Under the pieces are notes generated by a model. The model saw only the letters and a program-made list of their open reading frames with translations, was not told the DNA's origin and ran no database searches. This document shows positions 8,062-38,600 of a DNA stretch of 64,000 bases, piece after piece. The stretch's first letter is position 1; each line of letters begins with the position of its first letter. Where the stretch lies: positions 1-64,000 of the IMG/VR virus record IMGVR_UViG_3300045051_000720, one strand, 5' to 3'. The translations under genes and the position numbers were made by a program.

Positions 8062-8280
8062 TCAGGTCATCGCCAGCAGCAGCCGCAGAAGCCAGATGAC
8101 CGCCGCGCACGCGAGGATTGCCAGGATGACCTTGCGGAACGGCTCCGGAATCCCGATGTAGCCGACGAGCCATGTCAGCAAAAAAAATACCAGGCCGATC
8201 ACGACGACCGTGATGACCAAGTGGATCATCGCGTCGGAGTTGATGGCGGGGACCGACGAGGCGAGGACGATGGGTTGCAC
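8062..8280 (-). CDS. small two-TM membrane protein
   Basis: two hydrophobic helices around IGIPEPFRK. Confidence 0.7.
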   Translation of the reverse strand: MQPIVLASSVPAINSDAMIHLVITVVVIGLVFFLLTWLVGYIGIPEPFRKVILAILACAAVIWLLRLLLAMT

Positions 8281-8317
8281 GCCGACACTGACCGTCTGCG
8301 GGCGAATAGGTTGCCGC

Positions 8318-8647
8318 CTACCTTGCCAGCATCGTATTCATCTTCGCATTCGTGTCCCGCGTCTGCGCGTTCGTGTCGCGCACAAGCCCACGAATATCTT
8401 CCATTTGCCGGTCCAGGCCTTCCATTCGCACCATGAACTCGGTGCGCGGAATAAAGACGAGCATCCGCTTATCCATCGGCATGATTTCTTCATGCAGGGC
8501 AACCAACCCCTGCTTCAGGTGCTCGATGTCCGCGCGCGTCGATCCAGTGAACGCCCCGTAGATGATGGCTTGGCCGATGAACGGACCAACGATTGCGACC
8601 GCCAACGGCAGCCATTTGAACACGCTTGCTCGTTGGGATTCGCTCAT
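8318..8647 (-). CDS. membrane-anchored coiled-coil protein (lysis cluster)
   Basis: N-terminal TM, helical C-terminus. Confidence 0.65.
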   Translation of the reverse strand: MSESQRASVFKWLPLAVAIVGPFIGQAIIYGAFTGSTRADIEHLKQGLVALHEEIMPMDKRMLVFIPRTEFMVRMEGLDRQMEDIRGLVRDTNAQTRDTNAKMNTMLAR

Positions 8648-8844
8648 TGGATTTGATTCAGACGTTCGCGCGCAGCCTGCACTCTGGCAAGATGCCGCGT
8701 GAACTGCCAGCGGTGCAAGCGCGGAAGCCCTTCCTTGCGCAGCGCGTCCTGAATATGCCGCTCCAAGGCCTCCAACCGGATTCGCTCGCTTTCCAGCAAT
8801 GCGGCGTTCTTGGCGTCCGCGTCATTTGGCGGTTCCCATTTCAC
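8644..8844 (-). CDS. hypothetical helical protein
   Basis: 66 aa, ATGA overlap with downstream gene. Confidence 0.5.
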   Translation of the reverse strand: MKWEPPNDADAKNAALLESERIRLEALERHIQDALRKEGLPRLHRWQFTRHLARVQAARERLNQIQ

Positions 8845-9238
8845 GCAATGCCCTCCGGTGCTGGGGCAGCGGGTCGGGATGGTGAAGTTTCCACGCGAAC
8901 TCGGACACGCCCATTAGGTCGCTCAGCACGTCCTGAAACTCCACGATTGCATTGCCGAGCACGACCGTCTGCCCGCCCTGCTGCACCAGGTCGAAGTTGA
9001 CCGGCACGATCGCGTAACGCGGCGTCTTCCCGTCGGGCCGCATTTCCTTCACGCGGAACTTCGCCGTGACATGGAACGACTCCAATTCGCCGGCGTCGCT
9101 GTAAAGTGGCGTCCCCGAGAACTCGATGAGCTGCGGCTTCTCCACCAGCGTCGGCCCCTGCGCTCCGAATAGCGCGCACGCGAGGACCACGAGGACGACC
9201 AGCACCACGCAAAGGATCGTGAGCCGGCGGGAGGTCAC
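8822..9238 (-). CDS. hypothetical secreted/membrane-anchored protein
   Basis: N-terminal LTILCVVLVVLVVLACALFG; GTGA overlap at 9235-9238. Confidence 0.6.
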   Translation of the reverse strand: MTSRRLTILCVVLVVLVVLACALFGAQGPTLVEKPQLIEFSGTPLYSDAGELESFHVTAKFRVKEMRPDGKTPRYAIVPVNFDLVQQGGQTVVLGNAIVEFQDVLSDLMGVSEFAWKLHHPDPLPQHRRALREMGTAK

Positions 9239-9438
9239 AGCGGCACGACTTTCCCGTCTACGATCTTCAGCCCGGCTGCGGTAAGCGAATCGGTCGAGCG
9301 GTACTGCGCGAGCTTCATGAGTTCAGCGAAATCATCAGCCGTAACCTCGGTTTTACCCGAGTGAATCCAGGTGAAAATCTGCTGAGTGAGTGGCAGCCCG
9401 AATTGTACGAGTAGCTGGGCAATAATCGCGGGGCTCAT
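9235..9438 (-). CDS. hypothetical protein (MSPAIIAQLLVQFG...)
   Basis: C-terminal part of ORF-track 9235..10068; ATG 9438 overlaps lipoprotein stop. Confidence 0.6.
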   Translation of the reverse strand: MSPAIIAQLLVQFGLPLTQQIFTWIHSGKTEVTADDFAELMKLAQYRSTDSLTAAGLKIVDGKVVPL

Positions 9439-9785
9439 TTTGTCGGTGGGGTTGTGAGTTGAGACACGAGGTTTGCGAAGTCGGTGGCGAGCGCGATCAA
9501 GTCGGGGCTGGCCAGCGTTGAAAGGTCGGCCCGTGCTGCGCCGACCGCGACGCTGAAGGCCGGCTGCCAGCGGGTATCGTAGAACAGCGCGACCCTCTGC
9601 CACTGCGTCACGGTGATTTGGCCGCGCTTCAGGAGGTCGGTCGCGGCGTCCATCCCGGCCTTTGCGGATGCGCCCAACACCTTCAGTGTCGTGACGACTT
9701 GGGTGCGTTGCGTCGGCGCAGTCTGGCAGCCGGTCTGAAATGCCGGCGCGAATGCCAGCGCGAGTACGAGCAGGATTGTTCTCAT
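9435..9785 (-). CDS. putative lipoprotein
   Basis: signal peptide ending FQTG-C. Confidence 0.65.
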   Translation of the reverse strand: MRTILLVLALAFAPAFQTGCQTAPTQRTQVVTTLKVLGASAKAGMDAATDLLKRGQITVTQWQRVALFYDTRWQPAFSVAVGAARADLSTLASPDLIALATDFANLVSQLTTPPTK

Positions 9786-10162
9786 TGGATTGATGGTTGC
9801 GTCGGGAACGGCGGCTTGGTTTCAAGTGCCTTCGCGTCGTCGGCAGTCGTGGTAATCTTCCCGTCTTTGATTTCGGTCGTGCTCGCGAAAGGTGGCGTTG
9901 TCTCAGGCAGTTTGTCGGGAAGCGGATTGTCTTTGAAGTAGCCGAGCGCGGAAATACTGAAGACAACGCAGAACGTGTATGCGATGGTTCGCCAATCCGG
10001 AATGTTAAAATGGGCCGGGTCGAGTCCGGCGCCCACCGCTTGACCGACGAACGCATACACGGCGGCAATCGCGCCGTTGAACGACTTTGAGAATAGCCCG
10101 TAGGCGTAATGCTTGATCGCGATCCAAACGGAATGCCTGGTTTTTTTTAGTCCGTTGTTCAC
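9782..10162 (-). CDS. holin-like membrane protein
   Basis: GTG start at 10162; 2-3 hydrophobic segments, Pro/Thr-rich tail. Confidence 0.5.
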   Translation of the reverse strand: MNNGLKKTRHSVWIAIKHYAYGLFSKSFNGAIAAVYAFVGQAVGAGLDPAHFNIPDWRTIAYTFCVVFSISALGYFKDNPLPDKLPETTPPFASTTEIKDGKITTTADDAKALETKPPFPTQPSIQ

Positions 10163-10247
10163 GGTAGCCTCGGGTAAGTCGCCGGCTGCGGATGCTGGTT
10201 TGGCGCAAGTTCGACCGGCGGCAGTGTTGGCGCCGTCTGGCAGCCGC

Positions 10248-10679
10248 TCAAAACCGCAAGAAAAAACGCGACGCAAATTGCTCGTCGGACATTGGCCATA
10301 GAGTGTTGTTTTGAGGTTCGATAAAAAGCAGCCCGCGATCCGTTATCGCCGGTACGATTCCGTGGTTGGGGTCAAAAGGATCGGCCGGGGTTGGATCGAA
10401 CCAGATTTCCCCGACGCTCAACCCATCGTCCTCGGAAACCACGCCATCGCTTGCACCCCAGCACTCGATTGCCGTTGCGCGATAGAGTGCCGCGAAGTCG
10501 CGACAGGCGAAACGCTTCTTCCATTTGTGCAGATTCTCGTCCCAAAGGCGCTTTCGGAAAACATCGTAGAATGGTCCCTGCAGCCATTTGAGCGTCGGAA
10601 CCGCGTAACTCCCCGCACCCAAATGCGTGACGCAGGCCAGGGTGGATGGACAAAAAGCGAGGAGTTCGGCGCGAGTCAT
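10248..10679 (-). CDS. papain/transglutaminase-like Cys-His-Glu enzyme (MOA agglutinin C-terminal domain-like)
   Basis: W....ACRDFA, NHG, FIEPQN motifs. Confidence 0.55.
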   Translation of the reverse strand: MTRAELLAFCPSTLACVTHLGAGSYAVPTLKWLQGPFYDVFRKRLWDENLHKWKKRFACRDFAALYRATAIECWGASDGVVSEDDGLSVGEIWFDPTPADPFDPNHGIVPAITDRGLLFIEPQNNTLWPMSDEQFASRFFLRF

Positions 10680-10736
10680 GTTTCGTATTGAACCGCGCTC
10701 GAAACTGCCATGCGGTGAAGACTCATCGCGCGACTA

Positions 10737-11108
10737 TCACGGAGCGATGCCCTGTCGCGTGGCCTCGTCGAGCGCGACCTGTCGGAGGAGCGCGGCGAGT
10801 TGCACGCCCGTCACCGTCTTGCCGGCGGCGGTGTAATTCGTCGTCGCAACCGGTGCGCCGATCAGATCGAAGCTGACCTTGACGCGGTGGTCCTGTCCGA
10901 CCGCCTGCGTGATGTCGCTATCGTTCGTGACCAGCGCCTCCAAGAAAGCGTCCATTCGGACAGCGGTCGCCGTCGCGCTGGTGTTGCTCGCAAACGTGGT
11001 GTCGGCCTGCAAGCGCCAGACCCGCGTGGAATTCTTGGTCCATGCAGCCAACGCGAGGGAAGCGCCGAGACAGAGGGCGATGAGAAAGAGGAGAGACTTG
11101 GTTTTCAT
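10737..11108 (-). CDS. hypothetical protein with signal peptide
   Basis: MKTKSLLFLIALCLGASLALA; follows tail fibre. Confidence 0.65.
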   Translation of the reverse strand: MKTKSLLFLIALCLGASLALAAWTKNSTRVWRLQADTTFASNTSATATAVRMDAFLEALVTNDSDITQAVGQDHRVKVSFDLIGAPVATTNYTAAGKTVTGVQLAALLRQVALDEATRQGIAP

Positions 11109-13275: not shown

Positions 13276-13300
13276 AAAAAAGCGGCCCTTTTGAGGCCGC
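13276..13300 (-). terminator. rho-independent terminator
   Basis: GCGGCC/GGCCGC stem followed by U6 on minus strand. Confidence 0.65.
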
Positions 13301-13318
13301 CCGTGGGGTGCGAGATGG

Positions 13319-13745: not shown

Positions 13746-13774
13746 ATCATAGCCGCGCGCGAGGGTGTTGTCAA
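13746..13774 (-). promoter_or_regulatory. sigma70 promoter TTGACA-17-TATGAT
   Basis: near-perfect consensus. Confidence 0.75.
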
Positions 13775-13805
13775 CAATCGACCTCCATAATCCACCGCGC
13801 GCTGG

Positions 13806-13813
13806 GTGTATAA
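13806..13813 (+). promoter_or_regulatory. putative late promoter GTGTATAA
   Basis: recurrent motif, 26 nt upstream of ATG 13840. Confidence 0.65.
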
Positions 13814-13839
13814 CCAGCCCCGGGTGTGCCCCGGTCTCT

Positions 13840-14859
13840 ATGTGGCGACCCTTCTTGATTCTCACCCTCCTGCTTGCGACCGGATGCAGTCATTTTGACT
13901 ATACCGTGGCCCGGCGCTCGGCCATCGACAAGGAAATCGCGGAGGCGCGCGCCGAGACGACCAATCAGCTCAAGATCCTCAACGACCGCGAGTTGGGCCT
14001 GCTCAAAGACACCATCAAGCAGCTTCAGGCGCGCCAACAGGCGGCGTCGGACTACCTGTTCAAGGCGACCGTCACGTTCTCGACCCTCAAGACCCCCACC
14101 CGCCCCGAGATGGTGATGGGGCAGAGTGTCAATCAGACCGCCACCCAACTTCCCCCCGCCACGGCTGAGGCACAGGCCGCGACCTTGAAGGCCCTTCAGA
14201 CTGAACTGGACGAGACCAAGGTGTCCACCGAAGCCTTGCGCGCCCAATATGAAACCGAGCTGGGCAAAGCGCGCGCCGAGGGGGCGGCCAAAGCACAGGC
14301 CCTCAGCGATCTCGGGACGAAGCTGGCGGACGTGGACAAGGACCGCGTCAAGGCCCTCGAAGCGGCGCGCACCAAAGAGGCGGACCTCCAAGCCGCCAAG
14401 GACAAGGTACAGGACGCCGCGCTAGCGGCCAAGACCAAGGAGGCGGAGAACGCCAAGCACAACGAGCATGTCAAGATGTGGCTGATAGGCATTTTACTCA
14501 CTGCCGCTGCTGCCTGTGGCATAGGAGCAGCGTTCGTGCCTATTCCCACCCTCAAAACCAAGCTCATCATCGGCGCGGCGTTGTGTGGCGGGGCCGCGAT
14601 AGCGATTCCGTTCATAGAATGGTGGATGGTGATGGTCGCGATTGGGGGATGTCTTCTACTGGTCGCCGGGTGGGTAATCGTCGATTATCGACGCGAGCAT
14701 GGTGATGCTACAGACACTTATCGCGCCCTCAACGAGGTCAGGCAGAAGGCGACGGCTGAGTTCAAGGCGGTCGTGGCCCCCATCCTTGAGCAATGGCACA
14801 CCAACCCCGATACGAGCAAACGCATTGACGAGAGGCTCAAGCAGGTTGGGGACACCTAA
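13840..14859 (+). CDS. lipoprotein with long coiled coil and three C-terminal TM segments (unimolecular spanin candidate)
   Basis: MWRPFLILTLLLATG-C lipobox; Ala/Lys/Glu heptad region; three hydrophobic segments near C-terminus. Confidence 0.6.
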   Translation: MWRPFLILTLLLATGCSHFDYTVARRSAIDKEIAEARAETTNQLKILNDRELGLLKDTIKQLQARQQAASDYLFKATVTFSTLKTPTRPEMVMGQSVNQTATQLPPATAEAQAATLKALQTELDETKVSTEALRAQYETELGKARAEGAAKAQALSDLGTKLADVDKDRVKALEAARTKEADLQAAKDKVQDAALAAKTKEAENAKHNEHVKMWLIGILLTAAAACGIGAAFVPIPTLKTKLIIGAALCGGAAIAIPFIEWWMVMVAIGGCLLLVAGWVIVDYRREHGDATDTYRALNEVRQKATAEFKAVVAPILEQWHTNPDTSKRIDERLKQVGDT

Positions 14860-14869: not shown

Positions 14870-14898
14870 TTGACAATGCCCCCGCCACTGGCTAAGAT
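14870..14898 (+). promoter_or_regulatory. sigma70 promoter TTGACA-17-TAAGAT
   Basis: near-perfect consensus upstream of the sigma/terminase operon. Confidence 0.75.
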
Positions 14899-14920: not shown

Positions 14921-15442
14921 ATGCCCACCTACTACTGCCCGTTCGACCGCTGTGGGGCGGCGATTCAGTACACCATCACGAAACCCACCACCTGCCCGCG
15001 CTGCGAGCGGCGATTTGCGGATGCGTTCAAGGTGGCTGTGGCTCAAACACCCCCGCCGCCCGCGCCTGTTGTCGAGGAAGACGATGAACCGCGCCTTACT
15101 CGCTCGGCACTGGAAGCGCGGCGTAAGTCGCTCTCTACAACCTCCGTCAAGCCCCGCACTCGGCGCGAGCGTGATGATACCGCGGCCAATGTGATGACGC
15201 CAGTGGGGAGCAAAGCCCATCCTGCGCTGCCCGATCCCGAGCCCGAATCCGATATAGAGGACGATACCTACGACCCACGCGAGGCGCGGCGGCTGGCGCG
15301 TGAACTGGCGGCGTCCATCGACCCATCTACGATCGTCGTCGAGGACCAAGACGACGGCATCGTCCGATTCAGCCAGTTCGTCGAAGAAGCCAAGCGCAAT
15401 GGGGGCAAAGCCCCCAGCACCAAGACCAAGCGCCGCCGCTGA
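14921..15442 (+). CDS. zinc-ribbon protein with disordered charged C-terminus
   Basis: CPFDRC...CPRC motif. Confidence 0.7.
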   Translation: MPTYYCPFDRCGAAIQYTITKPTTCPRCERRFADAFKVAVAQTPPPPAPVVEEDDEPRLTRSALEARRKSLSTTSVKPRTRRERDDTAANVMTPVGSKAHPALPDPEPESDIEDDTYDPREARRLARELAASIDPSTIVVEDQDDGIVRFSQFVEEAKRNGGKAPSTKTKRRR

Positions 15443-16179
15443 TGGATGCCACTACGGAGGGCACCGCAAAGCCCGCCTTCGAGCACGCCTATCCCGAGAT
15501 CAAGCGTATCGTAGAGACCCGTCGTGGCTCGTGGACCTATACGAGTCTGATGGAGTGGACTGACGTATCGGCCATTATCGTAGAGCGGGCATGGCGCAAG
15601 TGGGATACCTTCGAGCCCGCGAAGGGGCCGCTAGAGAATTGGCTCAATCGTTTGATTAGCCACGCGCTTATCAATCTACGCCGCGACCTACTCCTTAGGT
15701 GGAGTCGTCCGTGCATAGGTGGTTGGAACGCAAGGGGGAAGACGTGCTTTCACAACCTCGGCGGCGAGACGTGCGCTATCACCAAATCGCATAAACAATG
15801 TGCTGAATGCCCCATCTATGCTGATTGGCAAAAGGCGCGCGAACATCAGCTTCACATCAAATCCACCGTCGCCCTCGAACACCACGCGCAGGAGGCGCAC
15901 AACATCCAAGGAGACTTCACTGACGCCGCCGAGATCAAGGACAAACTCGACGCCGCGATGAAGGAGGAGCTAACCCCGGGCGAGTGGCGCGTCTGGTATT
16001 GTCTTTACGTCAAACACATGAAGCCGAGCGAGGCCAGCACACACCTCGAAGCCCTTGTCAAGACATGGAAGCGCCTGCCGCGACCTGATGAGATCTATGG
16101 CTATCAATCCATCCTTCAGACCTCGCGCCGCCTTAAGGAGATCGCGATGGAGTGGCTGCGCCGGGAGGACCATATATGA
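15442..16179 (+). CDS. phage sigma70-family (ECF-like) sigma factor with Cys-rich insert
   Basis: region-2-like WRKWDTFEPAKGPLENWLNRLISHALINLRR; region-4-like LTPGEWRVWYCLY; five-Cys insert between them. Confidence 0.7.
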   Translation: MDATTEGTAKPAFEHAYPEIKRIVETRRGSWTYTSLMEWTDVSAIIVERAWRKWDTFEPAKGPLENWLNRLISHALINLRRDLLLRWSRPCIGGWNARGKTCFHNLGGETCAITKSHKQCAECPIYADWQKAREHQLHIKSTVALEHHAQEAHNIQGDFTDAAEIKDKLDAAMKEELTPGEWRVWYCLYVKHMKPSEASTHLEALVKTWKRLPRPDEIYGYQSILQTSRRLKEIAMEWLRREDHI

Positions 16180-17288: not shown

Positions 17289-17458
17289 CCGCTCATACCA
17301 TCAAGTGTACATGTTGTGGGGATGATACCGACGAGGCCAAGGCCTATACCGATCCTGACCTTCGGACACCCGTCTGCGAGGAATGCAAACTGGCGTTGAG
17401 ATGGGCTCAAGCACGCCTCAAGGAAGCCAACATCGTCGCGCCGCCGCGCGAGCCATGA
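17285..17458 (+). CDS. small zinc-finger protein
   Basis: hand-translated MTAHTIKCTCCGD...VCEEC; ATGA overlaps at both ends. Confidence 0.6.
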   Translation: MTAHTIKCTCCGDDTDEAKAYTDPDLRTPVCEECKLALRWAQARLKEANIVAPPREP

Positions 17459-18429
17459 TCAAGTGTCTGATCGATGATTCGGAGCACCCCTCCTATGCCG
17501 CTCTCCACACCTATGTGTGGAGGACGTATCACATGGGCAAGGAGTCGTATTATCGCACCTATCTCCCGCGCCACGATCTGCTTACGGGACAACCCATTCC
17601 CTTCAAGGATGCCGAGCAGTATCTGGGCGCTGACTTCGCCAACCGCGTCAACCTGAAGAAATGGCTTGCCACTCAGCCGCGCGAGGTGGGGTTGGCGTGG
17701 GCCAAGGAGTGGTTGGCCAAGCGCAAGGTCTCCAAGGGTCTGATCTATGCCCCGTCGCAGGCCGAGTTGCGCACCCTATGCACGCCCACGATGCCCTATT
17801 ACGAGGCAGTGGCCGCGGACGAGGGGGGCTACTATGGAATCACCACCGCAATGGGATTCAAGCTGCGCTATGTAAAGGGTCTGGTGGGTCAGACGCTACC
17901 CGCCGGAGTGTCGGTCATACAAGACACTCGCGAGCAGGCTCCTGTCAAGCTGGACCTTCCAACCCGTATCGATACCCTAGATGTAGGCGACTATGCTCTT
18001 GCATCGCCACATGACCAAGGCGTCCGCATCGAGCGCAAGTCTCTCGGTGATTTTTGTGGCACGCTCAGCGCGCGCAAACAGGTGCGCGAAGGTAAGACCA
18101 AGACGACCGAGTGGACAGCCTACGAACGCTTTGACCGTGAACTCACGCGCGCCAGTGAGGCAGGTCTCTACGTTGTCATGATGGTCGAGGCCAATATCAA
18201 TGACGCCCAACGATTCGACTACCTTCCTCAGACCAAATGGGTGAAGGCCACGCCCGCGCACATCCTGCACAACCTGCGCACGCTGTTGACCAAGTATCCC
18301 CTCTCGTTTCAGGTCGTGTTCTGCGATGGGCGAAAGGAGCTGGCAGACAAGATGACGCGCGTGCTGGCGTTGGGCGCGGCGGTGAGGTCGTACGACCTTC
18401 AGTACCACCATGAGGAGGGTCTCCTGTGA
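17455..18429 (+). CDS. ERCC4/XPF-family nuclease
   Basis: QDTREQ, LDVGDY, IERKSLGDF motifs. Confidence 0.85.
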   Translation: MIKCLIDDSEHPSYAALHTYVWRTYHMGKESYYRTYLPRHDLLTGQPIPFKDAEQYLGADFANRVNLKKWLATQPREVGLAWAKEWLAKRKVSKGLIYAPSQAELRTLCTPTMPYYEAVAADEGGYYGITTAMGFKLRYVKGLVGQTLPAGVSVIQDTREQAPVKLDLPTRIDTLDVGDYALASPHDQGVRIERKSLGDFCGTLSARKQVREGKTKTTEWTAYERFDRELTRASEAGLYVVMMVEANINDAQRFDYLPQTKWVKATPAHILHNLRTLLTKYPLSFQVVFCDGRKELADKMTRVLALGAAVRSYDLQYHHEEGLL

Positions 18430-20405
18430 GCTGGAAGGGCAACGGAAACAACCCCCCGCCCGACCCGATCACGGACTGGAACGCCGAGTTCGAGTGCCTG
18501 CTTGACTACAACGAGCTGCCCGAGGACATGGCGCGCAAGACCCTTGGGCGCTTCCTGATGACCAATATCGGGATGCTAGTCGAGATCCTCACACGCAAGA
18601 TGCTGGAGCCTTACCAGCGCATCGTGCTGAAGGGTTGGCTGAACAAAAATTTCTCACTCACCATCGCGGGCCGTGCGTGGGGTAAGAGCACCGTTGCGTC
18701 GCATTTCTGCTATCTCTATTGCCTGCTCAACCCGGGCCACCATATCTTGATCTGCGCCGCGACCTTCAGGTCCAGCCGTCAGATTGTTGAACGCATCGAT
18801 GAATGGGCCAACGCCGCGGGTGGTGAGTTATTGCGTGAGACGCTCAAAGCAACCCCGACCGGTGGTACCATCATCAAGAAGCAGGACCTGTATCGCATCT
18901 GGTTCAAGAACGGTTCATCGGTCACAGCAGTACCTCTGGGCGATCCCGACAATCTGCGCGGCTTTCGGTGCAACGTACTGATGATCGACGAAGGCCTGCT
19001 CATCCCACAGCACACCATCAACATGGTGCTCAAGCCGTTCCTCGCAGGCGGCGCCGACGCGACCAAAAAGCAACGCATCCGCCGCCGCGAGGCGCGCCTC
19101 ATCGAGATGGGCAAGATGCAGGCCAAGGACAAGGTCAAGTTCAAGGCCGACAGCAAGATGATCATCATCTCGTCCGCCTCCTACCAGTGGGAGGAGCTAT
19201 ACAAAGACATCTACAAACCCTACCGCGCCATCATCGAGGCAACGGATGTCGAGCGTCCGCGCGCCGAGGAGAACGAGAAGGGGGCATCCAGTTACCTCGT
19301 CCATCAGCTCTCCTACAAGATGGTCAACCCCGACCTGATGGACACCAGCATCCTTGAGGAAATCCGCGAGAAGCGCATCCCCGAGAGCGTCATCAAGCGC
19401 GAATACGAGGCACAGTTTGTCAACGAGTCGGGAGGCTTCTTCAGCGCGCGCCAGATGGCAGATTGCACTATCCCACTTGGCCAGCGGCCTTGTATCGAAA
19501 TCGTGGGCGAGCGTAACGCCGAATACATCCTCGCCGTCGACCCGGCGGGTGGCAGCATCGGTAACGATGCGGCGGGTGACCATTTCGCGATGTGTGTCAT
19601 CAAGATCATCCAGCGCGCCAAGGATGGCAAGAAGATCGGGTTAGTGGTACACCAATACGCGTGCGCGGGCAAGGACATGAAGCACCACCTAGCTTACATG
19701 TACTACCTGCTCAAGCGGTTCAACGTGGTCTATGTCGTGATGGACTCAACCGGTGGCGAGAACATGAGCTTTTTGACGATGTGCAACGAAAGCGAGTACT
19801 TCAAATCGCGCAAGATGGAGTTGAAGGCTATCGAGGCGGACTTCGCCAAGGAAGGGTTTGACGACACCGTCGCCGCGGTGCGCCGCTCGTACAACGCCGA
19901 CAGCAGTTTGCGGCGCATCGTGCATAACCAGTATTTCTCCTCCAGCATCATCAAGGCCGGTAACGACCACCTACGCGCCTGTTTTGAGCAGAAGACCATC
20001 ATGTTCGCGTCCAAGGCAGCGTCAGTGGACGGCGCAGTGGCTCAGATGTGCCAATGTGATATACTCGACATTCACAAGACCCATCCCGAATACTATGATC
20101 CTGAGTTGGAGGGCAGCGCCTCCATGCACGAGTTCGTCATCTATCAGGATGCCATGATGGACCTCGTCAAGACCGAGTGTGCGCTGATCGAGGTGAAGGC
20201 GAGCCCGCTGGGGCATCTGACCTATGATTTGCCCCAGCACATGACGCGTAACCGGAAGGATGAGAGGCGCTCCAGAAAGGACTCATATTCAGCACTTTGG
20301 CTAGGTGTCTGGGGCCTTAAGATATATCTTGCTATGTTGGAGATGCCCCCGCCCGAGGATGACACCTTCGTCCCTGTAGCTATCCCGATGCCGGGGGTGG
20401 GATAA
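18426..20405 (+). CDS. terL: terminase large subunit
   Basis: Walker A AGRAWGKST, RGFRCN + Walker B LMIDEG, RNaseH-like ILAVDP and C-terminal KDSYSAL. Confidence 0.92.
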   Translation: MSWKGNGNNPPPDPITDWNAEFECLLDYNELPEDMARKTLGRFLMTNIGMLVEILTRKMLEPYQRIVLKGWLNKNFSLTIAGRAWGKSTVASHFCYLYCLLNPGHHILICAATFRSSRQIVERIDEWANAAGGELLRETLKATPTGGTIIKKQDLYRIWFKNGSSVTAVPLGDPDNLRGFRCNVLMIDEGLLIPQHTINMVLKPFLAGGADATKKQRIRRREARLIEMGKMQAKDKVKFKADSKMIIISSASYQWEELYKDIYKPYRAIIEATDVERPRAEENEKGASSYLVHQLSYKMVNPDLMDTSILEEIREKRIPESVIKREYEAQFVNESGGFFSARQMADCTIPLGQRPCIEIVGERNAEYILAVDPAGGSIGNDAAGDHFAMCVIKIIQRAKDGKKIGLVVHQYACAGKDMKHHLAYMYYLLKRFNVVYVVMDSTGGENMSFLTMCNESEYFKSRKMELKAIEADFAKEGFDDTVAAVRRSYNADSSLRRIVHNQYFSSSIIKAGNDHLRACFEQKTIMFASKAASVDGAVAQMCQCDILDIHKTHPEYYDPELEGSASMHEFVIYQDAMMDLVKTECALIEVKASPLGHLTYDLPQHMTRNRKDERRSRKDSYSALWLGVWGLKIYLAMLEMPPPEDDTFVPVAIPMPGVG

Positions 20406-20420
20406 TTGGAGCGAGATTGG

Positions 20421-20428
20421 GTGTATAA
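20421..20428 (+). promoter_or_regulatory. putative late promoter GTGTATAA
   Basis: recurrent motif between terL and HNH/portal. Confidence 0.6.
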
Positions 20429-21217
20429 GTGAGAATCAAAGTCATTTCTGTGCCAAATCAAACCACTTCTAAGCAATGCCCTAGATGTCAAATTGTAAAA
20501 GAGTTGACAGATTTTCGCGTTGACCGCTCGAAAATATCTGGATACGGATCACATTGTAAAGCATGTGAGGCGGCTCGACGACGCGAGTGGTATGCGTCTC
20601 ATCGTGAAGAAAGCGCGGCCAATCACGCCGATTGGGTAGACGAAAATCGAGAGTATCTAAATGCATATCGGCGCGCTAGACAGTCTAAGGACACAGAATT
20701 TGTTGGTAAAAATAAATCTCGCACTAGACAAACACACGAAGAATGTGTTGAGAAAAGAAAAAATCAAGCAAGGGCATATTATCGCCGTACAGCCGATCAA
20801 CAGAAGGCCTATCGAAAAGAATATAACGCCACGCATAAGAAAGAAAATGCGCAACGCAAGGCAAGACAAGAAAGAGAGCATATCAATTACAAAATAGCTA
20901 ACCGTCTTCGAGCGAGAACAAGACTAGCTTTACGCGCCCAATCTAGCCAGAAACAATATACTCTAAACGAATTTTTGGGTTGTACACCTGAATTTCTGCG
21001 ACACTGGATTGAACAGCAATTTCGTGATGGAATGACTTGGGATAATTGGGGGTTGGGGGATGGCAAGTGGCATATCGATCACATCCGTCCCTGCGCATCG
21101 TTTGACCTCACCGATCCCGAACAACAGAAGCAGTGTTTCCATTATACTAATCTCCGCCCACTCTGGGCGATAGAAAATCTATCCAAAGGTGGTAAACTAT
21201 GTCACGAAAATACGTAA
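20429..21217 (+). mobile_element. free-standing HNH homing endonuclease
   Basis: N-terminal CPRC...CKAC Zn motif, WHIDHIRPCASFDL...HYTNLRPLWAIENLSKG; AT-rich. Confidence 0.85.
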
Positions 21218-23238
21218 AAAAATCCGAATACTGGTCCCAACCTCGGAAGCCTATTATGGTTCCGGCTATAGCGGCCCCCAGCACACCATCTAATACGCAA
21301 GTACCATTTGGAGATGTAGAGGCGGCATTTGATGGCCACGCGCATTATTCCGCTACAGCCGCATGTGGAGGGGGTGATGTCATAAATACTTCCTATCGAG
21401 ATAGTGCGGCTCCGTCCGTATTAGATGTCAATCGTTACCGAAACATTAGACAAGGGATTGTGCCGATTTCAGAAATCGAAGGTAATTATTCAGTATTCGG
21501 GGCCATCGATCTTGTTTATAGAGCTTATTACAATTTCGCGCTTTTGCGAAACGCCATTTCGATGCTTACTGATTTCAGTTCAGGAAAGATCAATGTCAAG
21601 ACCTCTAATAAACGAGTAAAAACCTTCATTGAAACGTGGCTTGATGCTATTGGCATCAATGATCTTCAGCAGAAAGCTTTTCTTGAATACTATCGTTCGG
21701 GTAATGTCTGGTTTTACAAATTTAGCGGTAAAATTAGCGACGATGGGTTGAACATGCTTAGGCGTGCCTATGCTAAAGAAACGGTCAGAGGTCAACAAGC
21801 ATTTTCGAGTCGGCAGAGCAAGATTGTTCCCATTCGGTATATCATACTGAATCCAATGCAAGTCTATTTAATGCGTGGGGCGTCCTATACCTATGGCTAC
21901 GTGCGCATGCTATCGACCTACGAGATCGAGCGGCTCAAGAACCCCCAGACCGACGAAGACAAGCAGATCTTCGACTCGTTCCCAAAGGACATCCAGCGCC
22001 AGATCAAGCAAGGCGGCGCATGGAGGTACCTGTTCGTGCCACTCGACCAAAACCGGCTCTACTACGTGTTCTATCGCAAGACCGACTACGAGCCCCTTGC
22101 GGTACCGATGGCCTTTCCTCTGCTGAACGACATCGAGTTCAAGCTGGAGCTGCGACGCATCGACATGACGCTCGCGCGCACGATGGAGCAAGTCGTGTTG
22201 CTCGTCACGGCGGGACAGAAGGCCGATCAGTTCAATCAGGCCCCCGGCAACAAGCAGCTGGTTGCTCTCCAGAATATCTTCCAGAATCAAACCATCGGGC
22301 GGGTGCTGGTCGCCGACTACACGACCAAGCTGGAGTGGTGCATCCCCGATCTCAAGGAGCTGCTCGGTCCCGCCAAGTACGAGCGCGTCGACAAGGACAT
22401 CAAGGAGGGCCTCCAGTACATGTTTTTTGGCGAGGAGAAATTCGCCAACGCCGCCATCAAGATCCGCATCTTCATCGAGTCGCTCAAGGAGGGCCGTCGC
22501 GCCTTCTTAGAGGGATTCCTCATCCCCGAGGTCAAGAAAGTCTGCGAGCAGATGGGCTTCCGCGATGTTCCCACGCTGGAGTACGAGGACATCGTTCTCC
22601 AAGACGAGGCTCTGATGAACCGGCTGTATGTCCAGATGGGCCAGCTGGGTTTCCTCACCCCCGACGAGGTGTTTACGGCGGTCAAGACAGGGGATTTGCC
22701 GACGACGGAGGAGTCCCTAGACCATCAAGAAGCGCACAAGGCCGCGCGCAAGAAGGGGTTGTACGAACCCGTTGCGCCCGCACTAGCCGGCGGCAAGGGT
22801 CGTCCTGACGGCACTCCCGGTACACCTGCGACGCGCCATGTGTCCACCCCGATCGGCCAGACCAAGGCCAGCGAAGACATCGTGCGCGGCGATCATCACT
22901 TCGGCATGGTACGAATCGCCGAGAACCTCGTCGCGATGGACAAGGTACGCGCGGCAGTGGAGGCAACCCTCCTCAAGCAGCACAAGCTAGATGAGCTGAA
23001 CGATGCCCAGCAGATCGTCGCCGCGCAGGTGGCGCAGTCGATTTGCTTCAACGAGCCCGAGGGTCAGTGGCTGAAGGCGGTCAAGCGGTACGTCAAGGAG
23101 CCGCGAGACCCGCCCAAGACCGTGACCGACGAGATCGCCGAGATTCGTGCGGCGTATCACGAGGATGAACACCCGATCAGTCAGTGGCTTGGGGGGGTGT
23201 TGGTGCGCAGCAAGGTGGATTTCACGCCACGGGCGTGA
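21199..23238 (+). CDS. portal protein
   Basis: position between TerL and protease; EYYRSGNVWFY, DYEPLAVPMAFP, DYTTKLEW motifs; 679 aa. Confidence 0.8.
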   Translation: MSRKYVKKSEYWSQPRKPIMVPAIAAPSTPSNTQVPFGDVEAAFDGHAHYSATAACGGGDVINTSYRDSAAPSVLDVNRYRNIRQGIVPISEIEGNYSVFGAIDLVYRAYYNFALLRNAISMLTDFSSGKINVKTSNKRVKTFIETWLDAIGINDLQQKAFLEYYRSGNVWFYKFSGKISDDGLNMLRRAYAKETVRGQQAFSSRQSKIVPIRYIILNPMQVYLMRGASYTYGYVRMLSTYEIERLKNPQTDEDKQIFDSFPKDIQRQIKQGGAWRYLFVPLDQNRLYYVFYRKTDYEPLAVPMAFPLLNDIEFKLELRRIDMTLARTMEQVVLLVTAGQKADQFNQAPGNKQLVALQNIFQNQTIGRVLVADYTTKLEWCIPDLKELLGPAKYERVDKDIKEGLQYMFFGEEKFANAAIKIRIFIESLKEGRRAFLEGFLIPEVKKVCEQMGFRDVPTLEYEDIVLQDEALMNRLYVQMGQLGFLTPDEVFTAVKTGDLPTTEESLDHQEAHKAARKKGLYEPVAPALAGGKGRPDGTPGTPATRHVSTPIGQTKASEDIVRGDHHFGMVRIAENLVAMDKVRAAVEATLLKQHKLDELNDAQQIVAAQVAQSICFNEPEGQWLKAVKRYVKEPRDPPKTVTDEIAEIRAAYHEDEHPISQWLGGVLVRSKVDFTPRA

Positions 23239-31227: not shown

Positions 31228-34200
31228 TTAGGGGTTCGGGATAGTACCCTGACGAGAGCCATCAACATAGACCTCAACGTTAGCACCATTCCAGTTAAGC
31301 GAAATGTTATTAGAGCCTGTATACTGAATCCCATTACCTTTTACCTGAAAGGGGACCTGAAAAGTTGCTTTACCGTCAAAATTAGATGTAGTGTCTACAT
31401 CAAGGATATCGCAGTTGATGGAGCCATTCTGGCCGTTTAACGTAATAGTGCCGGCCGCCGATTCGTTAGATAATAATAGAACCCCGGGAAATTGTCCACC
31501 AATGTTCTGTGCTCCTAGGGCGACTACTAAATTATTAGACGTATTAAATGAGCGAAATAGTTTATTTCCGGCTGCCCCTAGGAACATTTCCAATCGCTCT
31601 CCAGCAGGATCTCCTACTAACGCCCCTTGAGTATTTAATACTGCGAGTGAAGATCCGGCTCCTCCAGTAAAAGCCCCACGCGCCGAGACGTTGTTAAACT
31701 CTGCATCGCCGTTTGCTCTAATTCTCCATCCCGCGCTGCCCGCGCTGAATGTACTACTTTCAAGATCGAGATTGCCAAACACAGCAGTTCCGTACGACTG
31801 GAATGAATTGACCGTCGCTTTCATGGACGCGATCTTGCCATCTGCTCCAATCTCAAATCCCCATCGCGCCTGAGCCGCACCACCAATTCCATTCACGCTA
31901 CCGGTCACTGCCGCGTCCATGTAAAGACGGGCAGTGGCATTATTACCTGTAGTGACGGTGCTGAGCTGGGTCAGATAGGCCGCATAAGCACCTCCTGACG
32001 CTGCCAATGCATCCATGATGGTACCCGCCAGCGCGTAGTTAATCGCGCCAGTTGTCACTAGCCGCGCGCTGACCGCATTGATCTGCGTAGACTGTGCGCC
32101 GCTTGCGTTGACAACAGCTGTCTGGATGGATGCATTAAGTGCAGTGCTGATCGCACCCACTCCAGTGATCGATCCACTCAGACCAATCACTGTAGTGAGA
32201 AGCGTAGATCCAGTCTGATAGAGCGCGGTTTGAAACAGGTTGAGGTCACCCGTTAGGAGGTTAAACGCGCCCGACAGCCGATCACTGATGTCATAGAAGA
32301 ACGTCCCGAACAATTGTTCGGCATTACCCGAGATGGGACCATAGATCGGAGCATTGTAATCACCGTTAGCCGCGAGCGATCCGCTATAGCCAAACGTATC
32401 GACCAGCGAGAACCACGTGTAGAAAGACCCTACCTGTGGCGCAATGTTGGCGTTTCCCGCTAGATTAGTCGAGGTGAAGTTGACATTATCGTAGGTTGGC
32501 GTGAACGATGGACTGGCATTGCACCACAGATAGATCCCACTGATATCACTCTGGGGGCGTGGTGTGATGTTGTACACAACACCGCCGTTATACCCCACGA
32601 ATCCGCTGTTCAAAGGCGGTGGAGGCTGGGGGTTGTTGACCGCAAGTCGCGCGCCTGATACCACGTTGTTAAACTCATCTACCGAATCTACCGCGAAGGT
32701 AAACCCGCGCAGGGGTTTCACGGTCGTGCCGGTGAACAGATACTGAGGATCGATATTCCACGTCGTGTTGCTCCCGCCGCTGATCGAGATGTCGGTGGAC
32801 GACAGAATCGTGCTTTCGGCGCCCAGCTTGAGCAGTCGCGCCCGGTATCCCGTTACGAACTGTGCGGTCGGCGTTTCGTTATCATTCGAATCAAGGTTAA
32901 CATGCCAGCCAAACGATGGCGAGCGGCCCATATAACCCGTGTAGCGCGCATCGCTCGGGCGAATGTAGTACATGTCTTCATTGGCCGCGATGAACACACC
33001 AGACAGTGCTGCGGTCGTACCCAACGGATTTGTGGACGCGTTGGTATAGAGGATACGGCAGAACGGAGACTGATATCCATTGGCGTTGTTAGCCGCTACT
33101 GAGAAGGTATAAACGCCGTATCGATCGGGGGTGTAGTTGATTCCTGTCGTCTGTGGTTGACCAATCAGGAAGGGTGTACCCCCAAACGACCCTGACTGGG
33201 TATAGTAGGCCACATTGGACGATGTGGACCCCGACCACGACAGGTAGAGATACGAGTAAAAGCTGTTATCCACTTCCAACCCCGTCACGCGCGTCGCGAC
33301 CAATCCGGTTGGCGGAGCGGGTGGGGTAGTATCGCCCGCGACTGGGGGATTAGTCACCACCGAGTAGTTGTTGTTGACGAGGTAGTTGACACCAGTGTTA
33401 TATTTGACCCCGAGGATCTCGATTGTCCCCTGCCGCGGCTCGGAGGTCGCCAAACATTTGTATTGCGTGGCTTGGTCAAACACCGTGACCGATGTACCAC
33501 TGGCGGTCAGAGTCCACGTCGATCCTTTGAACAGCGCGCTAGAGAAGCCGCTATTCAGCGTCAGCAATGTCGTACTGTTGGTCGGGGCGGTAGTGACCGT
33601 GCGCGTCTCGATCTGAGAGTTGCGAATCAGTCCCACCTGATTGGACCCCGTGATTCCGGTCGCATCCACCGTCGCGGGCACGATGGCGGCCATGAAATAG
33701 GTGAAACCGTTGGTGAGCTTGACGGATTTGTCCAGCGTGATCGCCTCTCGGCCCGTGCTGAAGTCCATGATCTTACCGCCCTGCTGCTGGTTGTTGCGGT
33801 AGTTGTCGTAGACGTTGAACACGTCACCCGGACGCAGGTATAATCCCTCCACATCGGTCGCGAAAGCAATGGTCTCCGTCAACAGCTGTTCAACCGTCAA
33901 TATCCAGTTGGCCGCACGGATGGCTTGCCCGCGTGAGGTGGTCGCGAAGGCAGTGATCTGCTTCTCGACATAACCGAATCGGGCGATGCCTTGGGTGTCT
34001 TCGACGCGCTCAGGGGTCGTACGAAACAGATTGTCTGGGTCCGTCCATTTGACTACGCACACTGTCGAACGCGTGTTGCGCGGCGTGTCCGAGTACGTAA
34101 ACGCACCGTTGACGACGTTGGCGTTGGAGAAATTGAACACCGGGTCGCGCAACTCGCTACCTACCGGGAAGATTCGCCCATTGGCGTAGTACAACATGCC

Positions 34201-35397: not shown

Positions 35398-35400
35398 GGT

Positions 35401-38594: not shown

Positions 38595-38600
38595 CCACCG

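What the first reader, a model, noticed from the sequence alone, without database searches (positions are those of the whole stretch)
13840..14859. Coiled-coil unimolecular spanin candidate with three inner-membrane helices
Seen: lipobox LATG-C16 with Ser at +2, ~190 aa of coiled coil, three hydrophobic segments whose charge pattern (TLKTK and DYRREH inside) puts the tail in the cytoplasm, and a late-promoter motif upstream. Known: u-spanins such as T1 gp11 combine an outer-membrane lipoyl N-terminus with a single C-terminal TM and a beta-rich body; two-component spanins use coiled coils. Inference: a hybrid single-chain spanin architecture that bridges both membranes.
Basis: partly seen in the sequence, partly recalled or inferred. 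Interest (0 to 1): 0.65.

Follow-up and report, generated by a model that had tools for sequence, protein, structure and literature searches.

The report
Lipoprotein-to-inner-membrane helical tether of jumbo phages
This gene of an uncultured 219-kb soil phage encodes a protein with a lipid anchor at one end, a long helical rod in the middle and three membrane helices at the other; it founds a large unnamed phage family that may be a new all-helical single-chain spanin, but no function has been shown.

Summary
ORF 13840-14859 (+) encodes a 339-aa protein with these parts:
- a canonical lipoprotein signal (L-A-T-G-Cys16, Ser at +2)
- about 195 helical periplasmic residues
- three hydrophobic helices (213-281)
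- a 58-aa cytoplasmic tail

A phage promoter-like motif, GGTGTATA, lies 27 nt upstream. It is about 18-fold over-represented and also precedes the tape-measure and other tail-region genes.

The protein has no Pfam, PHROG or PADLOC match, and only sub-threshold NCBIfam matches. It nevertheless defines a large unnamed family: 310 clusters at 50% identity, nearly all about 350 aa. In that family:
- the lipobox Cys is almost universal
- Asp at +2 occurs once in 108 sequences
- the Cys-to-membrane distance is fixed at about 198 residues

The AlphaFold2 model is all-helical. Its periplasmic part folds as an antiparallel hairpin, so the lipid anchor and the membrane helices sit at the same end and the most conserved residues sit at the tip.

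A lambda-J-like tail tip points to a proteobacterial, two-membrane host.

The spanin reading is only partly supported. The topology fits, but:
- the gene never lies beside recognisable lysis genes
- it is not related to T1 gp11
- its membrane block and cytoplasmic tail are conserved more than a mere anchor would need

My best guess, at about 0.4, is a new all-helical single-chain spanin-like tether.

The parts
13805..13812 (+). Phage promoter-like motif GGTGTATA, 27 nt upstream of the ATG
   Evidence: 12 copies in the window against 0.68 expected and 26 in the genome. The copies are co-oriented with the genes and lie upstream of the tape-measure gene and other genes of the tail-gene region. 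The motif is conserved upstream of the homologues in L002, L003 and L007.
13840..14859 (+). CDS of the 339-aa protein P0001 (stop codon 14857-14859)
   Evidence: GC3 is 0.77. There are 52 homologues and 310 clusters at 50% identity.
13840..13887 (+). Lipoprotein signal peptide, residues 1-16, ending in the lipobox L-A-T-G-Cys16 (Cys codon 13885-13887)
   Evidence: Cys16 is invariant in A3. A lipobox is present in 108 of 117 full-length family representatives, and Asp at +2 occurs once in 108.
13900..14082 (+). Periplasmic helix 1, residues 21-81 (first arm of the hairpin)
   Evidence: AF2 helix H21-81, pLDDT 80-96. About 100 residues spanning model positions 16/22-192 superpose on antiparallel helical hairpins.
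14083..14226 (+). Conserved tip segment, residues 82-129, with two short helices and the invariant residues R88, E122, L123 and D124
14227..14475 (+). Periplasmic helix 2, residues 130-212 (second arm plus the stalk next to the membrane)
   Evidence: AF2 helix H130-232 runs without a break into the first membrane helix.
14476..14682 (+). Block of three membrane helices, residues 213-281, with the short cytoplasmic loop TLKTK and a one-residue periplasmic turn (E260)
   Evidence: Hydropathy and AF2 helices H236-258 and H261-303. P234 is invariant; K212, A230, K239 and W262 are 90% or more conserved. The block is 64-78 residues long across the family.
14683..14856 (+). Cytoplasmic C-terminal tail, residues 282-339, helical, with invariant W319
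   Evidence: Tail length is 43-111 residues (median 67) in the family.

Best explanation
P0001 is the founding example of a large, so far unnamed family of envelope proteins of uncultured large phages.

Proposed pathway:
1. The precursor is exported, lipidated on Cys16 and cleaved. This is inferred from a canonical, almost universally conserved lipobox.
2. The family avoids Asp at +2, so the lipid end is most likely passed to the outer membrane by the host Lol system (inferred).
3. The three C-terminal helices stay in the inner membrane, with the tail in the cytoplasm.
4. The mature protein would then be a single-chain tether across the periplasm.

Geometry: laid end to end, its helices total about 27 nm (about 180 helical residues at 0.15 nm each).

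Proposed action: the two long helices can also pack on each other as an antiparallel hairpin, as in the AF2 model. In that state the lipid anchor and the membrane helices lie at one end. I propose the protein acts late in infection like a unimolecular spanin. It would be held extended by the cell wall, and once the wall is degraded it would collapse into the hairpin and pull the outer membrane onto the inner membrane. This is the geometry of class I viral fusion proteins and of the model for lambda Rz/Rz1.

The conserved three-helix block and cytoplasmic tail suggest an added role, in regulation or in disturbing the inner membrane, that known spanins lack.

Shown here: the sequence architecture, its conservation, the promoter motif, and the helical hairpin model.
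Inferred: lipidation, outer-membrane sorting, the extended state, the collapse, and any role in lysis.
For: - Lipobox and three membrane helices.
- Cys16 invariant; the residue before it is always G, S or A.
- Lipobox in 108 of 117 representatives at 50% identity, with Asp at +2 only once.
- No periplasmic Cys in P0001, and in only 6 of 108 relatives. Kongari et al. report the same for all 58 known u-spanins (PMC6139136).
- The Cys-to-membrane distance is held at a median of 198 residues (5-95% range 193-205) in 150 sequences that diverge to about 20% identity. This looks like a ruler constraint.
- All-helical AF2 model, pLDDT 82. Its residues 16/22-192 superpose on antiparallel helical hairpins.
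- The promoter-like motif is shared with the tape-measure and other genes of the tail-gene region, so expression is probably late.
- The downstream sigma-factor genes have their own sigma70-like promoter at 14870-14898, so P0001 is regulated on its own.
- Host probably has two membranes: the J-like tail tip matches phrog_31 at E 4.5e-149, and its relatives are found only in phages of Proteobacteria.
- No canonical adjacent i-spanin/o-spanin pair was found in the genome.
- Lysis genes of large phages can be scattered. This is my own knowledge of T4; the 'separated' spanin architecture is described in PMC6139136.
Against: - The gene is never next to a recognisable holin or endolysin. In high-GC relatives it heads the block Zn-ribbon / sigma factor / ERCC4 nuclease / large terminase / probable portal. 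In low-GC relatives it lies among nucleotide-metabolism and replication genes.
- No homology to T1 gp11 or to any spanin family model.
- Known u-spanins are small, beta-rich, and have one membrane helix and almost no tail (PMC6139136). Here there are three conserved membrane helices and a conserved tail of 43-111 aa.
- The best-conserved residues are at the hairpin tip. That suggests a specific binding partner rather than simple tethering.
- The AF2 hairpin could equally be the resting state of a protein anchored only in the inner membrane.
- One distant relative (P0206) appears to have an uncleaved N-terminal hydrophobic anchor instead of a lipobox.
- The window holds another small Pro-rich lipoprotein gene (10159-10299, minus strand) with a weak LysC/Rz1-like hit. 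It might supply the outer-membrane function.
- No endolysin was identified, so the lysis system of this phage is unknown.
Confidence: 0.4

Rival explanations
1. The protein lives on the inner membrane, and the helical hairpin is its native state. The lipidated N-terminus and the three helices both sit in or near the inner membrane. The conserved tip, about 11-12 nm out, binds a periplasmic or outer-membrane component: the cell wall, an outer-membrane lipoprotein such as the 46-aa Pro-rich one, or a channel. The geometry resembles an i-spanin or the alpha-hairpin of an efflux adaptor protein. The purpose could be lysis as the inner partner of a two-part system, envelope remodelling, or blocking entry of other phages.
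For: - The AF2 hairpin puts Cys16 next to residue ~192, about 20 residues from the first membrane helix.
- The strongest conservation is at the tip (R88, E122-L123-D124).
- The EmrA adaptor hairpin is among the structural matches (Z 10.2), though this lies in the generic range for helical rods.
- P0206 seems to have a plain hydrophobic N-terminal anchor.
- An o-spanin-like 46-aa lipoprotein gene lies 3.5 kb away.
Against: - The invariant lipobox Cys and the near absence of Asp at +2 (1 of 108) point to outer-membrane sorting under the E. coli rule.
- The 46-aa lipoprotein cluster is absent from the 10-kb flanks of the relatives, so it is not a conserved partner.
- The gene carries the late-type promoter motif, whereas superinfection-exclusion genes are usually early (my own knowledge).
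- No PADLOC hit.
- An AF2 monomer often folds long helices back on themselves.
Confidence: 0.27
2. A holin-like or lysis-timing protein. The three helices (N-terminus out, C-terminus in, charged cytoplasmic tail) would form the lethal or regulatory inner-membrane module, as in class I holins. The periplasmic rod would then be a sensor or tether.
For: - Topology of three helices with a charged cytoplasmic tail.
- The membrane block and tail are conserved across the family, unlike spanin anchors, which Kongari et al. describe as needed for anchoring only (PMC6139136).
- Late-type promoter.
- No other clear holin is identified in the genome.
Against: - No match to any holin family in Pfam or PHROGs.
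- At 339 aa it is far larger than class I holins.
- It is not next to an endolysin.
- Several small proteins with two or three membrane helices elsewhere in the genome are better holin candidates (for example 8062-8280, 9782-10165 and 184601-184909).
Confidence: 0.1
3. A membrane scaffold for virion assembly or DNA packaging. The argument is that in the high-GC lineage the gene always heads the block containing the large terminase and the probable portal.
For: - Conserved gene order with the Zn-ribbon, sigma factor, ERCC4 nuclease, large terminase and ~680-aa protein genes in L002, L003, L005 and L009.
- Promoter shared with morphogenesis genes.
Against: - This gene order is lost in the low-GC and gp25-containing relatives.
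- The downstream genes have their own sigma70-like promoter.
- A lipidated 200-residue periplasmic rod has no obvious role in packaging, which happens in the cytoplasm.
Confidence: 0.08

Closest known systems
Unimolecular spanin gp11 of phage T1 (and the 13 u-spanin families of Kongari et al. 2018, PMC6139136)
   Same: Both have an N-terminal lipoprotein signal with Ser at +2 (T1: L-S-G-C-S; here L-A-T-G-C-S), a C-terminal inner-membrane anchor, no periplasmic Cys, and a single chain that could link both membranes.
   Different: - Size: gp11 is 133 aa, against 339 aa here.
- Periplasmic body: about 85 residues and beta-rich in gp11; about 195 residues and all-helical here.
- Anchor: one membrane helix and an 8-aa tail in gp11; three conserved helices and a conserved 58-aa tail here.
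- Context: gp11 ends a holin-endolysin-spanin cassette; this gene is never beside lysis genes.
- No sequence similarity (hhalign probability 1.2%).
Two-component spanin lambda Rz/Rz1 (and P2 LysB/LysC, phiKZ gp141/gp141.1)
   Same: A helical periplasmic rod made of two long helices joined by a linker, proposed to collapse into a hairpin and bring the membranes together. A lipid anchor is at one end and an inner-membrane helix at the other (PMC6139136, PMC12894885).
   Different: - Here both anchors are on one chain and in the opposite order: lipid at the N-terminus, membrane helices at the C-terminus.
- There is no N-terminal type II membrane helix.
- There are no intermolecular disulfide Cys.
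- No o-spanin gene lies immediately downstream, which is described as invariable for i-spanins in PMC12894885.
Class I viral fusion proteins (e.g. coronavirus S2 core)
   Same: The order is membrane-inserting end, long helix, loop, long helix, membrane anchor. In the hairpin both membrane-binding ends lie together. S2 fusion cores are among the structural matches (2ieq Z 9.6, 5zhy Z 9.2).
   Different: The matches are in the generic range for helical hairpins, and there is no homology. The outer end is a lipid anchor, not a fusion peptide. A trimeric state is not shown.
Alpha-hairpin of periplasmic adaptor proteins (EmrA, AcrA)
   Same: A membrane-anchored (lipoprotein or membrane-helix) periplasmic protein whose long antiparallel helical hairpin carries a conserved tip that docks on an outer-membrane partner (EmrA 4tko Z 10.2, 116 residues, rmsd 3.1 A).
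   Different: There are no lipoyl or beta-barrel domains and no Pfam HlyD-type match. Three C-terminal membrane helices are present. The Z score is in the generic range.
Class I holins (lambda S105)
   Same: Three membrane helices with the N-terminus out and the C-terminus in, a charged cytoplasmic tail, and late expression.
   Different: Holins are about 100 aa and lack a lipoprotein signal and a large periplasmic domain. No family match.

Membership tests
Unimolecular spanin (topological class, Kongari et al. 2018) | N-terminal outer-membrane lipoprotein signal (lipobox, no inner-membrane retention residue at +2) | tested here: met
   L-A-T-G-Cys16-Ser17. Cys is invariant. Lipobox in 108 of 117 representatives, with Asp at +2 once in 108. 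Lipidation and sorting themselves were not tested.
Unimolecular spanin (topological class, Kongari et al. 2018) | C-terminal transmembrane domain anchoring the same chain in the inner membrane | tested here: met
   Hydrophobic helices at 213-236, 241-259 and 261-281. There are three rather than one, followed by a 58-aa tail.
Unimolecular spanin (topological class, Kongari et al. 2018) | Gene lies in or beside the lysis cassette (holin, endolysin) | tested here: not met
   Neighbours are a 138-aa unknown, tail fibres, a Zn-ribbon protein, a sigma factor, an ERCC4 nuclease and the large terminase. The same or other non-lysis contexts are seen in relatives.
Unimolecular spanin (topological class, Kongari et al. 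2018) | No periplasmic cysteine | tested here: met
   None in residues 17-212. Present in only 6 of 108 relatives.
Unimolecular spanin (topological class, Kongari et al. 2018) | Beta-rich periplasmic domain (T1 gp11 type) | tested here: not met
   The AF2 model is entirely helical.
Unimolecular spanin (topological class, Kongari et al. 2018) | Complements a lambda Rz/Rz1 lysis defect; required for outer-membrane disruption | not testable with these tools
   Needs an experiment.
T1 gp11 sequence family | Detectable sequence similarity to gp11 | tested here: not met
   hhalign of A3 against gp11: probability 1.2%, with only G-C-S aligned. tblastn against 50,697 phage records found no match.
i-spanin (Rz-like) | N-terminal type II membrane helix with the o-spanin gene overlapping or immediately downstream | tested here: not met
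   The N-terminus is a lipoprotein signal and the membrane helices are C-terminal. The next gene is a cytoplasmic Zn-ribbon protein.
Class I holin | Small (about 70-150 aa) protein with three membrane helices, N-out/C-in, next to the endolysin, matching a holin family | tested here: not met
   Only the topology of the C-terminal block fits. The protein is 339 aa, has no holin family match and has no adjacent endolysin.
TIGR04211 (SH3 domain protein with membrane anchor, YgiM-like) | Score above the curated cut-off of 65 bits | tested here: not met
   21.3 bits, E 1.7e-4, over the coiled coil plus first membrane helix only. I treat this as compositional similarity.

The most novel reading that the evidence does not exclude
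This is a new class of phage membrane-fusion machine: an all-helical single-chain spanin built like a class I viral fusion protein (lipid anchor, helix, conserved loop, helix, membrane anchor). Its conserved three-helix inner-membrane block and cytoplasmic tail would add a holin-like or regulatory function. One polypeptide would then couple inner-membrane triggering to outer-membrane disruption. The family is widespread (at least 310 clusters at 50% identity) in uncultured large phages of two-membrane bacteria.
Probability: 0.3. Interest if true: 0.8.

Novelty: new variant of a known kind. Interest (0 to 1): 0.58.

Why it matters
[quoted passage not shown] This family is large, well conserved and easy to recognise: a lipobox, a helical segment of about 198 residues, three membrane helices and a tail.

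If it is a spanin, it would:
- fill part of that gap
- show that single-chain spanins can be helical, like class I fusion proteins
- give a compact, genetically tractable model for fusion between the two bacterial membranes

If it is not a spanin, it is still a conserved envelope-spanning or envelope-probing device of a major phage lineage with no known counterpart. Either way it deserves a family name and an experiment.

Tried and rejected
- Family scans of P0001. Pfam, PHROGs and PADLOC gave nothing. NCBIfam gave only sub-threshold coiled-coil-type hits: TIGR04211 at 21 bits against a cut-off of 65, plus SMC and sigma-factor noise.
- Structure searches of the AF2 model. Foldseek against PDB and BFVD found nothing at E <= 0.001. 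The ESM Atlas returned only unnamed viral clusters. VIA-align returned only generic helical hairpins with Z up to 11.2, inside the range the tool itself calls common for helical rods. I use these hits for geometry only, not for homology.
- Cultured relatives. tblastn of P0001 and of two distant homologues against 50,697 phage records found no match. A scan of GTDB genomes found no relative. No named or cultured carrier was found.
- Search for an endolysin in the whole 219-kb record. Pfam PF00959, PF01464, PF01510, PF01471, PF00182, PF05838, PF13539 and PF07486 were all negative. The controls for PF00182 and PF05838 did not ring anywhere, so those two results say nothing.
- The only enzyme-like lysis candidate is the 143-aa Cys-His protein at 10248-10679 (minus strand). 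Its model is of low confidence (pLDDT 58), so its papain/transglutaminase-like fold assignment (best Z 9.2) is tentative.
- Canonical two-component spanin. Genome-wide scans for lipobox ORFs, including embedded and overlapped ones, found no adjacent i-spanin/o-spanin pair.
- The longer ORF from GTG 13765. Rejected because the extension is not conserved and starts upstream of the promoter motif.
- The minus-strand ORFs overlapping the gene (13771-14391 and 14196-14615). Treated as shadows of the high-GC coding frame.
- Not used: complex prediction, because I make no binding claim; read laying, because the only full holder is a DNA run that may be the source sample and no RNA run exists.
Full report
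WHERE THE WINDOW COMES FROM

The window is the first 64 kb of a 219,464-bp IMG/VR virus record, estimated 96% complete, with about 60% GC. The only run holding the region in full is a rhizosphere metagenome.

It has no close cultured relative. The large terminase reaches only about 25% identity to Bacillus and Clostridium phages.

The tail module is siphovirus-like and lambda-like:
- a 1,647-aa tape-measure protein at 39350-44293
- a 1,389-aa tail-tip protein at 31228-35397 that matches 'central tail fiber J' (phrog_31, E 4.5e-149)

The J-like protein's relatives among cultured phages are all from phages of Proteobacteria, such as Stenotrophomonas, Acinetobacter, Xanthomonas, Ralstonia and E. 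coli. A host with an outer membrane is therefore likely, though not shown.

THE OBSERVATION

The ORF 13840-14859 (+) gives a 339-aa protein, P0001.

- Residues 1-16 are a textbook lipoprotein signal: a basic start, a hydrophobic core and L-A-T-G-Cys16, with Ser at +2.
- Hydropathy gives three hydrophobic segments at 213-236, 241-259 and 261-281.
- The short loop TLKTK and the tail starting DYRREH carry the positive charges. The predicted path is periplasm, in, out, in, with a 58-aa cytoplasmic tail.
- The longer frame from GTG 13765 is not conserved in homologues.
- The overlapping minus-strand ORFs are shadows of a frame with GC3 of 0.77.

The body is helical but is not one continuous coiled coil (see the structure section below).

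A LARGE, UNNAMED FAMILY

P0001 matches nothing in Pfam, PHROGs or PADLOC. In NCBIfam it gives only sub-threshold coiled-coil noise.

- The word search found 52 unnamed metagenomic homologues of 41-86% identity.
- IMG/VR holds relatives of 25-31% identity in phages of 38-51% GC.
- A profile of 23 sequences found 310 clusters at 50% identity at E <= 0.001, and 127 at E <= 1e-30. Nearly all are 340-370 aa and aligned end to end, with no domain fusions.

Across this range the architecture does not change:
- The lipobox Cys is invariant in alignment A3.
- A lipobox was recognised in 108 of 117 full-length representatives. Most of the other nine look like truncated gene calls or fell just under my threshold.
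- The residue before the Cys is G, S or A.
- The +2 residue is Q, S, N, T, A, G or E, and is Asp only once in 108.
- The distance from the Cys to the membrane block has a median of 198 residues (5-95% range 193-205).
- The membrane block is 64-78 residues long.
- The tail is 43-111 residues long.
- Apart from Cys16, the invariant residues are Y21, L73, R88, E122-L123-D124, L133, P234 and W319.

Conservation is therefore strongest in three places: the lipidation site, the segment between the two long helices, and parts of the membrane block and tail.

STRUCTURE

The AlphaFold2 model built on the 48-sequence alignment is confident (mean pLDDT 82) and all-helical. Its helices are:
- 21-81
- 88-103
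- 109-122
- 130-232, which runs straight into the first membrane helix
- 236-258
- 261-303
- two tail helices

An exhaustive structural search aligns about 100 residues spanning model positions 16/22 to 192 onto antiparallel helical hairpins:
- a designed hairpin, Z 11.2 at 1.9 A
- EmrA, Z 10.2
- PspA
- the dynein stalk
- coronavirus S2 fusion cores, Z 9.2-9.6

These scores lie in the range the tool calls common for helical rods, so they say nothing about ancestry. They do show the geometry of the model. Helix 21-~75 packs antiparallel on helix ~140-192, the conserved segment 76-135 forms the tip, and Cys16 lies next to residue ~192. That is only about 20 residues from the membrane surface.

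A monomer prediction can fold long helices back artificially. The hairpin is a model, not a fact.

EXPRESSION SIGNALS

GGTGTATA at 13805-13812 lies 27 nt upstream of the ATG.
- The octamer occurs 12 times in the window against 0.68 expected and 26 times in the genome.
- Almost every copy is co-oriented with the local genes and lies 10-70 nt upstream of a start. This includes the tape-measure gene and several genes of the tail-gene region.
- It is also present upstream of the homologues in L002, L003 and L007.

The phage encodes its own sigma-70-region-2 protein at 15442-16179. I take the motif to be a phage-specific, probably late, promoter.

Sigma70-type promoters flank the gene:
- TTGACA-17-TATGAT on the minus strand (13774-13746) drives the divergent 138-aa gene, which ends in a terminator.
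- TTGACA-17-TAAGAT (14870-14898) lies just after the stop of P0001 and ahead of the Zn-ribbon and sigma genes.

P0001 is therefore its own regulatory unit, and not simply the first gene of the sigma/terminase operon.

GENOMIC CONTEXT

In the high-GC relatives the gene always heads the same block: Zn-ribbon protein, sigma factor, a ~380-aa unknown, ERCC4 nuclease, large terminase, and a ~680-aa probable portal. Tail-fibre-like genes or a homing endonuclease lie upstream.

In low-GC relatives it lies among glycosyltransferase, dUTPase and other nucleotide-metabolism genes. In one of these there is also a clamp loader and a gp25-type baseplate gene, which indicates a myovirus.

No recognisable holin or endolysin is adjacent anywhere. 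This is the main argument against a lysis role. The argument is weakened because large phages such as T4 scatter their lysis genes (my own knowledge).

OTHER ENVELOPE GENES IN THE WINDOW

Eight common endolysin Pfam families are absent from the whole record. Two of those searches had silent controls, so they say nothing.

The minus strand at 8062-11108, just downstream of the tail fibre with a Peptidase_S74 chaperone domain, holds a run of exported or membrane proteins with no family match:
- a signal-peptide protein, 10737-11108
- a 143-aa protein with invariant Cys59 and His106, 10248-10679. Its low-confidence model (pLDDT 58) resembles papain/transglutaminase-fold enzymes: best match the MOA protease domain at Z 9.2, then N-acetyltransferases, transglutaminases, NlpC/P60 and PeiW.
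- a 46-aa ORF, 10159-10299, that overlaps the end of the 143-aa gene in another frame. It encodes a lipobox (L-S-G-C) followed by a Pro-rich 26-residue tail.
- a protein with two membrane helices, 9782-10165
- a 116-aa lipoprotein, 9435-9785
- a 138-aa protein with an N-terminal hydrophobic helix, 8822-9238
- a 109-aa protein with an N-terminal membrane helix followed by helical sequence, 8318-8647
- a 72-aa protein with two membrane helices, 8062-8280

The 46-aa ORF is conserved, with the same overlap, in an unrelated contig, L017. It gives a weak hit to the P2 LysC (Rz1-like) model: E 0.072, 13 bits against a cut-off of 27.

This could be the real lysis cassette. Alternatively the small lipoprotein could be a receptor-masking protein of the Llp/Cor kind, which also lie beside tail-fibre genes (my own knowledge).

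The cluster is not present in the 10-kb flanks of the P0001 relatives. It is therefore not a conserved partner of the family.

COMPARISON WITH KNOWN SPANINS

T1 gp11 is 133 aa. It has the lipobox L-S-G-C-S, about 85 periplasmic residues, one C-terminal membrane helix and an 8-residue tail. It closes a holin-endolysin-spanin cassette.

P0001 shares the two topogenic signals and the lack of periplasmic Cys. Kongari et al. report that lack for all 58 u-spanins (PMC6139136). Nothing else is shared, and hhalign gives 1.2% probability.

The helical two-arm rod recalls lambda Rz. P0001, however, lacks the N-terminal type II helix and the downstream o-spanin gene, which is described as invariable for i-spanins (PMC12894885).

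It is therefore not a member of any known spanin sequence family. It can only be called a u-spanin in the topological sense, and one of the defining contextual features fails.

MECHANISM AND ODDS

The most economical reading of an invariant lipobox that avoids Asp at +2, a fixed-length helical rod and a C-terminal inner-membrane anchor, expressed with the late genes of a phage of a two-membrane host, is a single-chain tether between the two membranes.

- Laid end to end, the helices span about 27 nm. This is enough to cross a periplasm.
- Folded as in the model, the two anchors come together.
- That is the geometry proposed for spanin-mediated fusion and seen in class I viral fusion proteins.

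I give this spanin-like reading about 0.4.

The rivals are:
- about 0.27: the hairpin is the resting state of an inner-membrane protein whose conserved tip binds an envelope partner
- about 0.1: a holin-like role for the three-helix block
- about 0.08: an assembly scaffold
- remainder: something not yet imagined

NOVELTY AND SCORE

Nothing in the papers or libraries searched describes this family. If it is a spanin, it is a clearly new variant: helical, three membrane helices, a conserved tail, and a gene outside any cassette. If not, it is a new kind of phage envelope protein.

The family is large and easy to test. Function is unproven and the context is unhelpful, so interest is moderate to high (0.58).

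HOUSEKEEPING

Noticed in passing
window 13805, 20420, 24590, 29326, 38963 (+); 38595, 44339, 49779, 50831, 51727, 52886, 62659 (-): The octamer GGTGTATA (often GGGTGTATAG) occurs 12 times against 0.68 expected in the window and 26 times in the genome. It is mostly intergenic, co-oriented with the genes and 10-70 nt upstream of starts. It is probably the promoter read by the phage's own sigma factor. Leaders are very short and Shine-Dalgarno sequences are not evident.
   Followed up: partly
window 10159-10299 (-), overlapping the 3' end of 10248-10679 (-): An unannotated-looking 46-aa ORF encodes a lipobox (L-S-G-C) followed by a Pro-rich 26-residue mature part. The same overlapped arrangement, with a shared P-P-V-E-L-A-P-N-Q-H-P motif, is found in contig L017. 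It gives a weak P2 LysC/Rz1-like hit (E 0.072). It resembles either an o-spanin or an Llp/Cor-like receptor-masking lipoprotein.
   Followed up: partly
window 10248-10679 (-): A 143-aa protein with invariant Cys59 (C-R-D-F-A) and His106. Its low-confidence model has a papain/transglutaminase-like fold (best Z 9.2 to the MOA protease domain). In three phage contigs it directly follows tail-fibre genes. It may be an endopeptidase-type endolysin or a tail-associated enzyme.
   Followed up: partly
window 8062-9785 (-): A run of small envelope proteins without family matches: a 116-aa lipoprotein (9435-9785) whose mature N-terminus C-Q-T-A-P-T is identical to that of the 46-aa lipoprotein; a 138-aa protein with an N-terminal hydrophobic helix; a 109-aa protein with an N-terminal membrane helix plus helical domain (i-spanin-like); and a 72-aa protein with two membrane helices (holin-like).
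   Followed up: partly
window 13746-13774 (-) and 14870-14898 (+); terminator 13280-13302 (-): Near-consensus sigma70 promoters flank the gene: TTGACA-17-TATGAT drives the divergent 138-aa gene (almost leaderless, followed by a terminator), and TTGACA-17-TAAGAT drives the Zn-ribbon and sigma-factor genes. These suggest host-polymerase (early) transcription of the phage sigma factor.
   Followed up: partly
window 14921-16179 (+): A Zn-ribbon protein (173 aa) is followed, with overlapping stop and start codons, by a 245-aa protein in which only sigma-70 region 2 is detectable. The pair is conserved in relatives and is a candidate regulator of the GGTGTATA promoters.
   Followed up: no
window 20001-22000; gene 20429-21217 (+): GC content drops to 0.47 around an endonuclease VII/HNH-type gene inserted between the large terminase and the probable portal gene. 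It is probably a homing endonuclease. In relative L003 the terminase gene itself carries a LAGLIDADG intein, and GIY-YIG genes lie upstream of the homologue in L003 and L005.
   Followed up: no
window 17383-18429 (+) and 23256-25775 (+): An ERCC4-type nuclease lies immediately upstream of the large terminase, and this position is conserved in relatives. An 839-aa protein with an RNA-ligase/2'-5' ligase-like segment follows the probable portal.
   Followed up: no
window 31228-44293 (-): A lambda-like tail-tip module (J-like 1,389-aa protein, tape measure of 1,647 aa) sits in a 219-kb genome. This suggests a jumbo siphovirus of a proteobacterial host.
   Followed up: partly
P0206 (distant family member): One distant relative seems to carry an uncleaved hydrophobic N-terminal anchor instead of a lipobox. 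If real, the family's function may tolerate an N-terminus anchored in the inner membrane.
   Followed up: no
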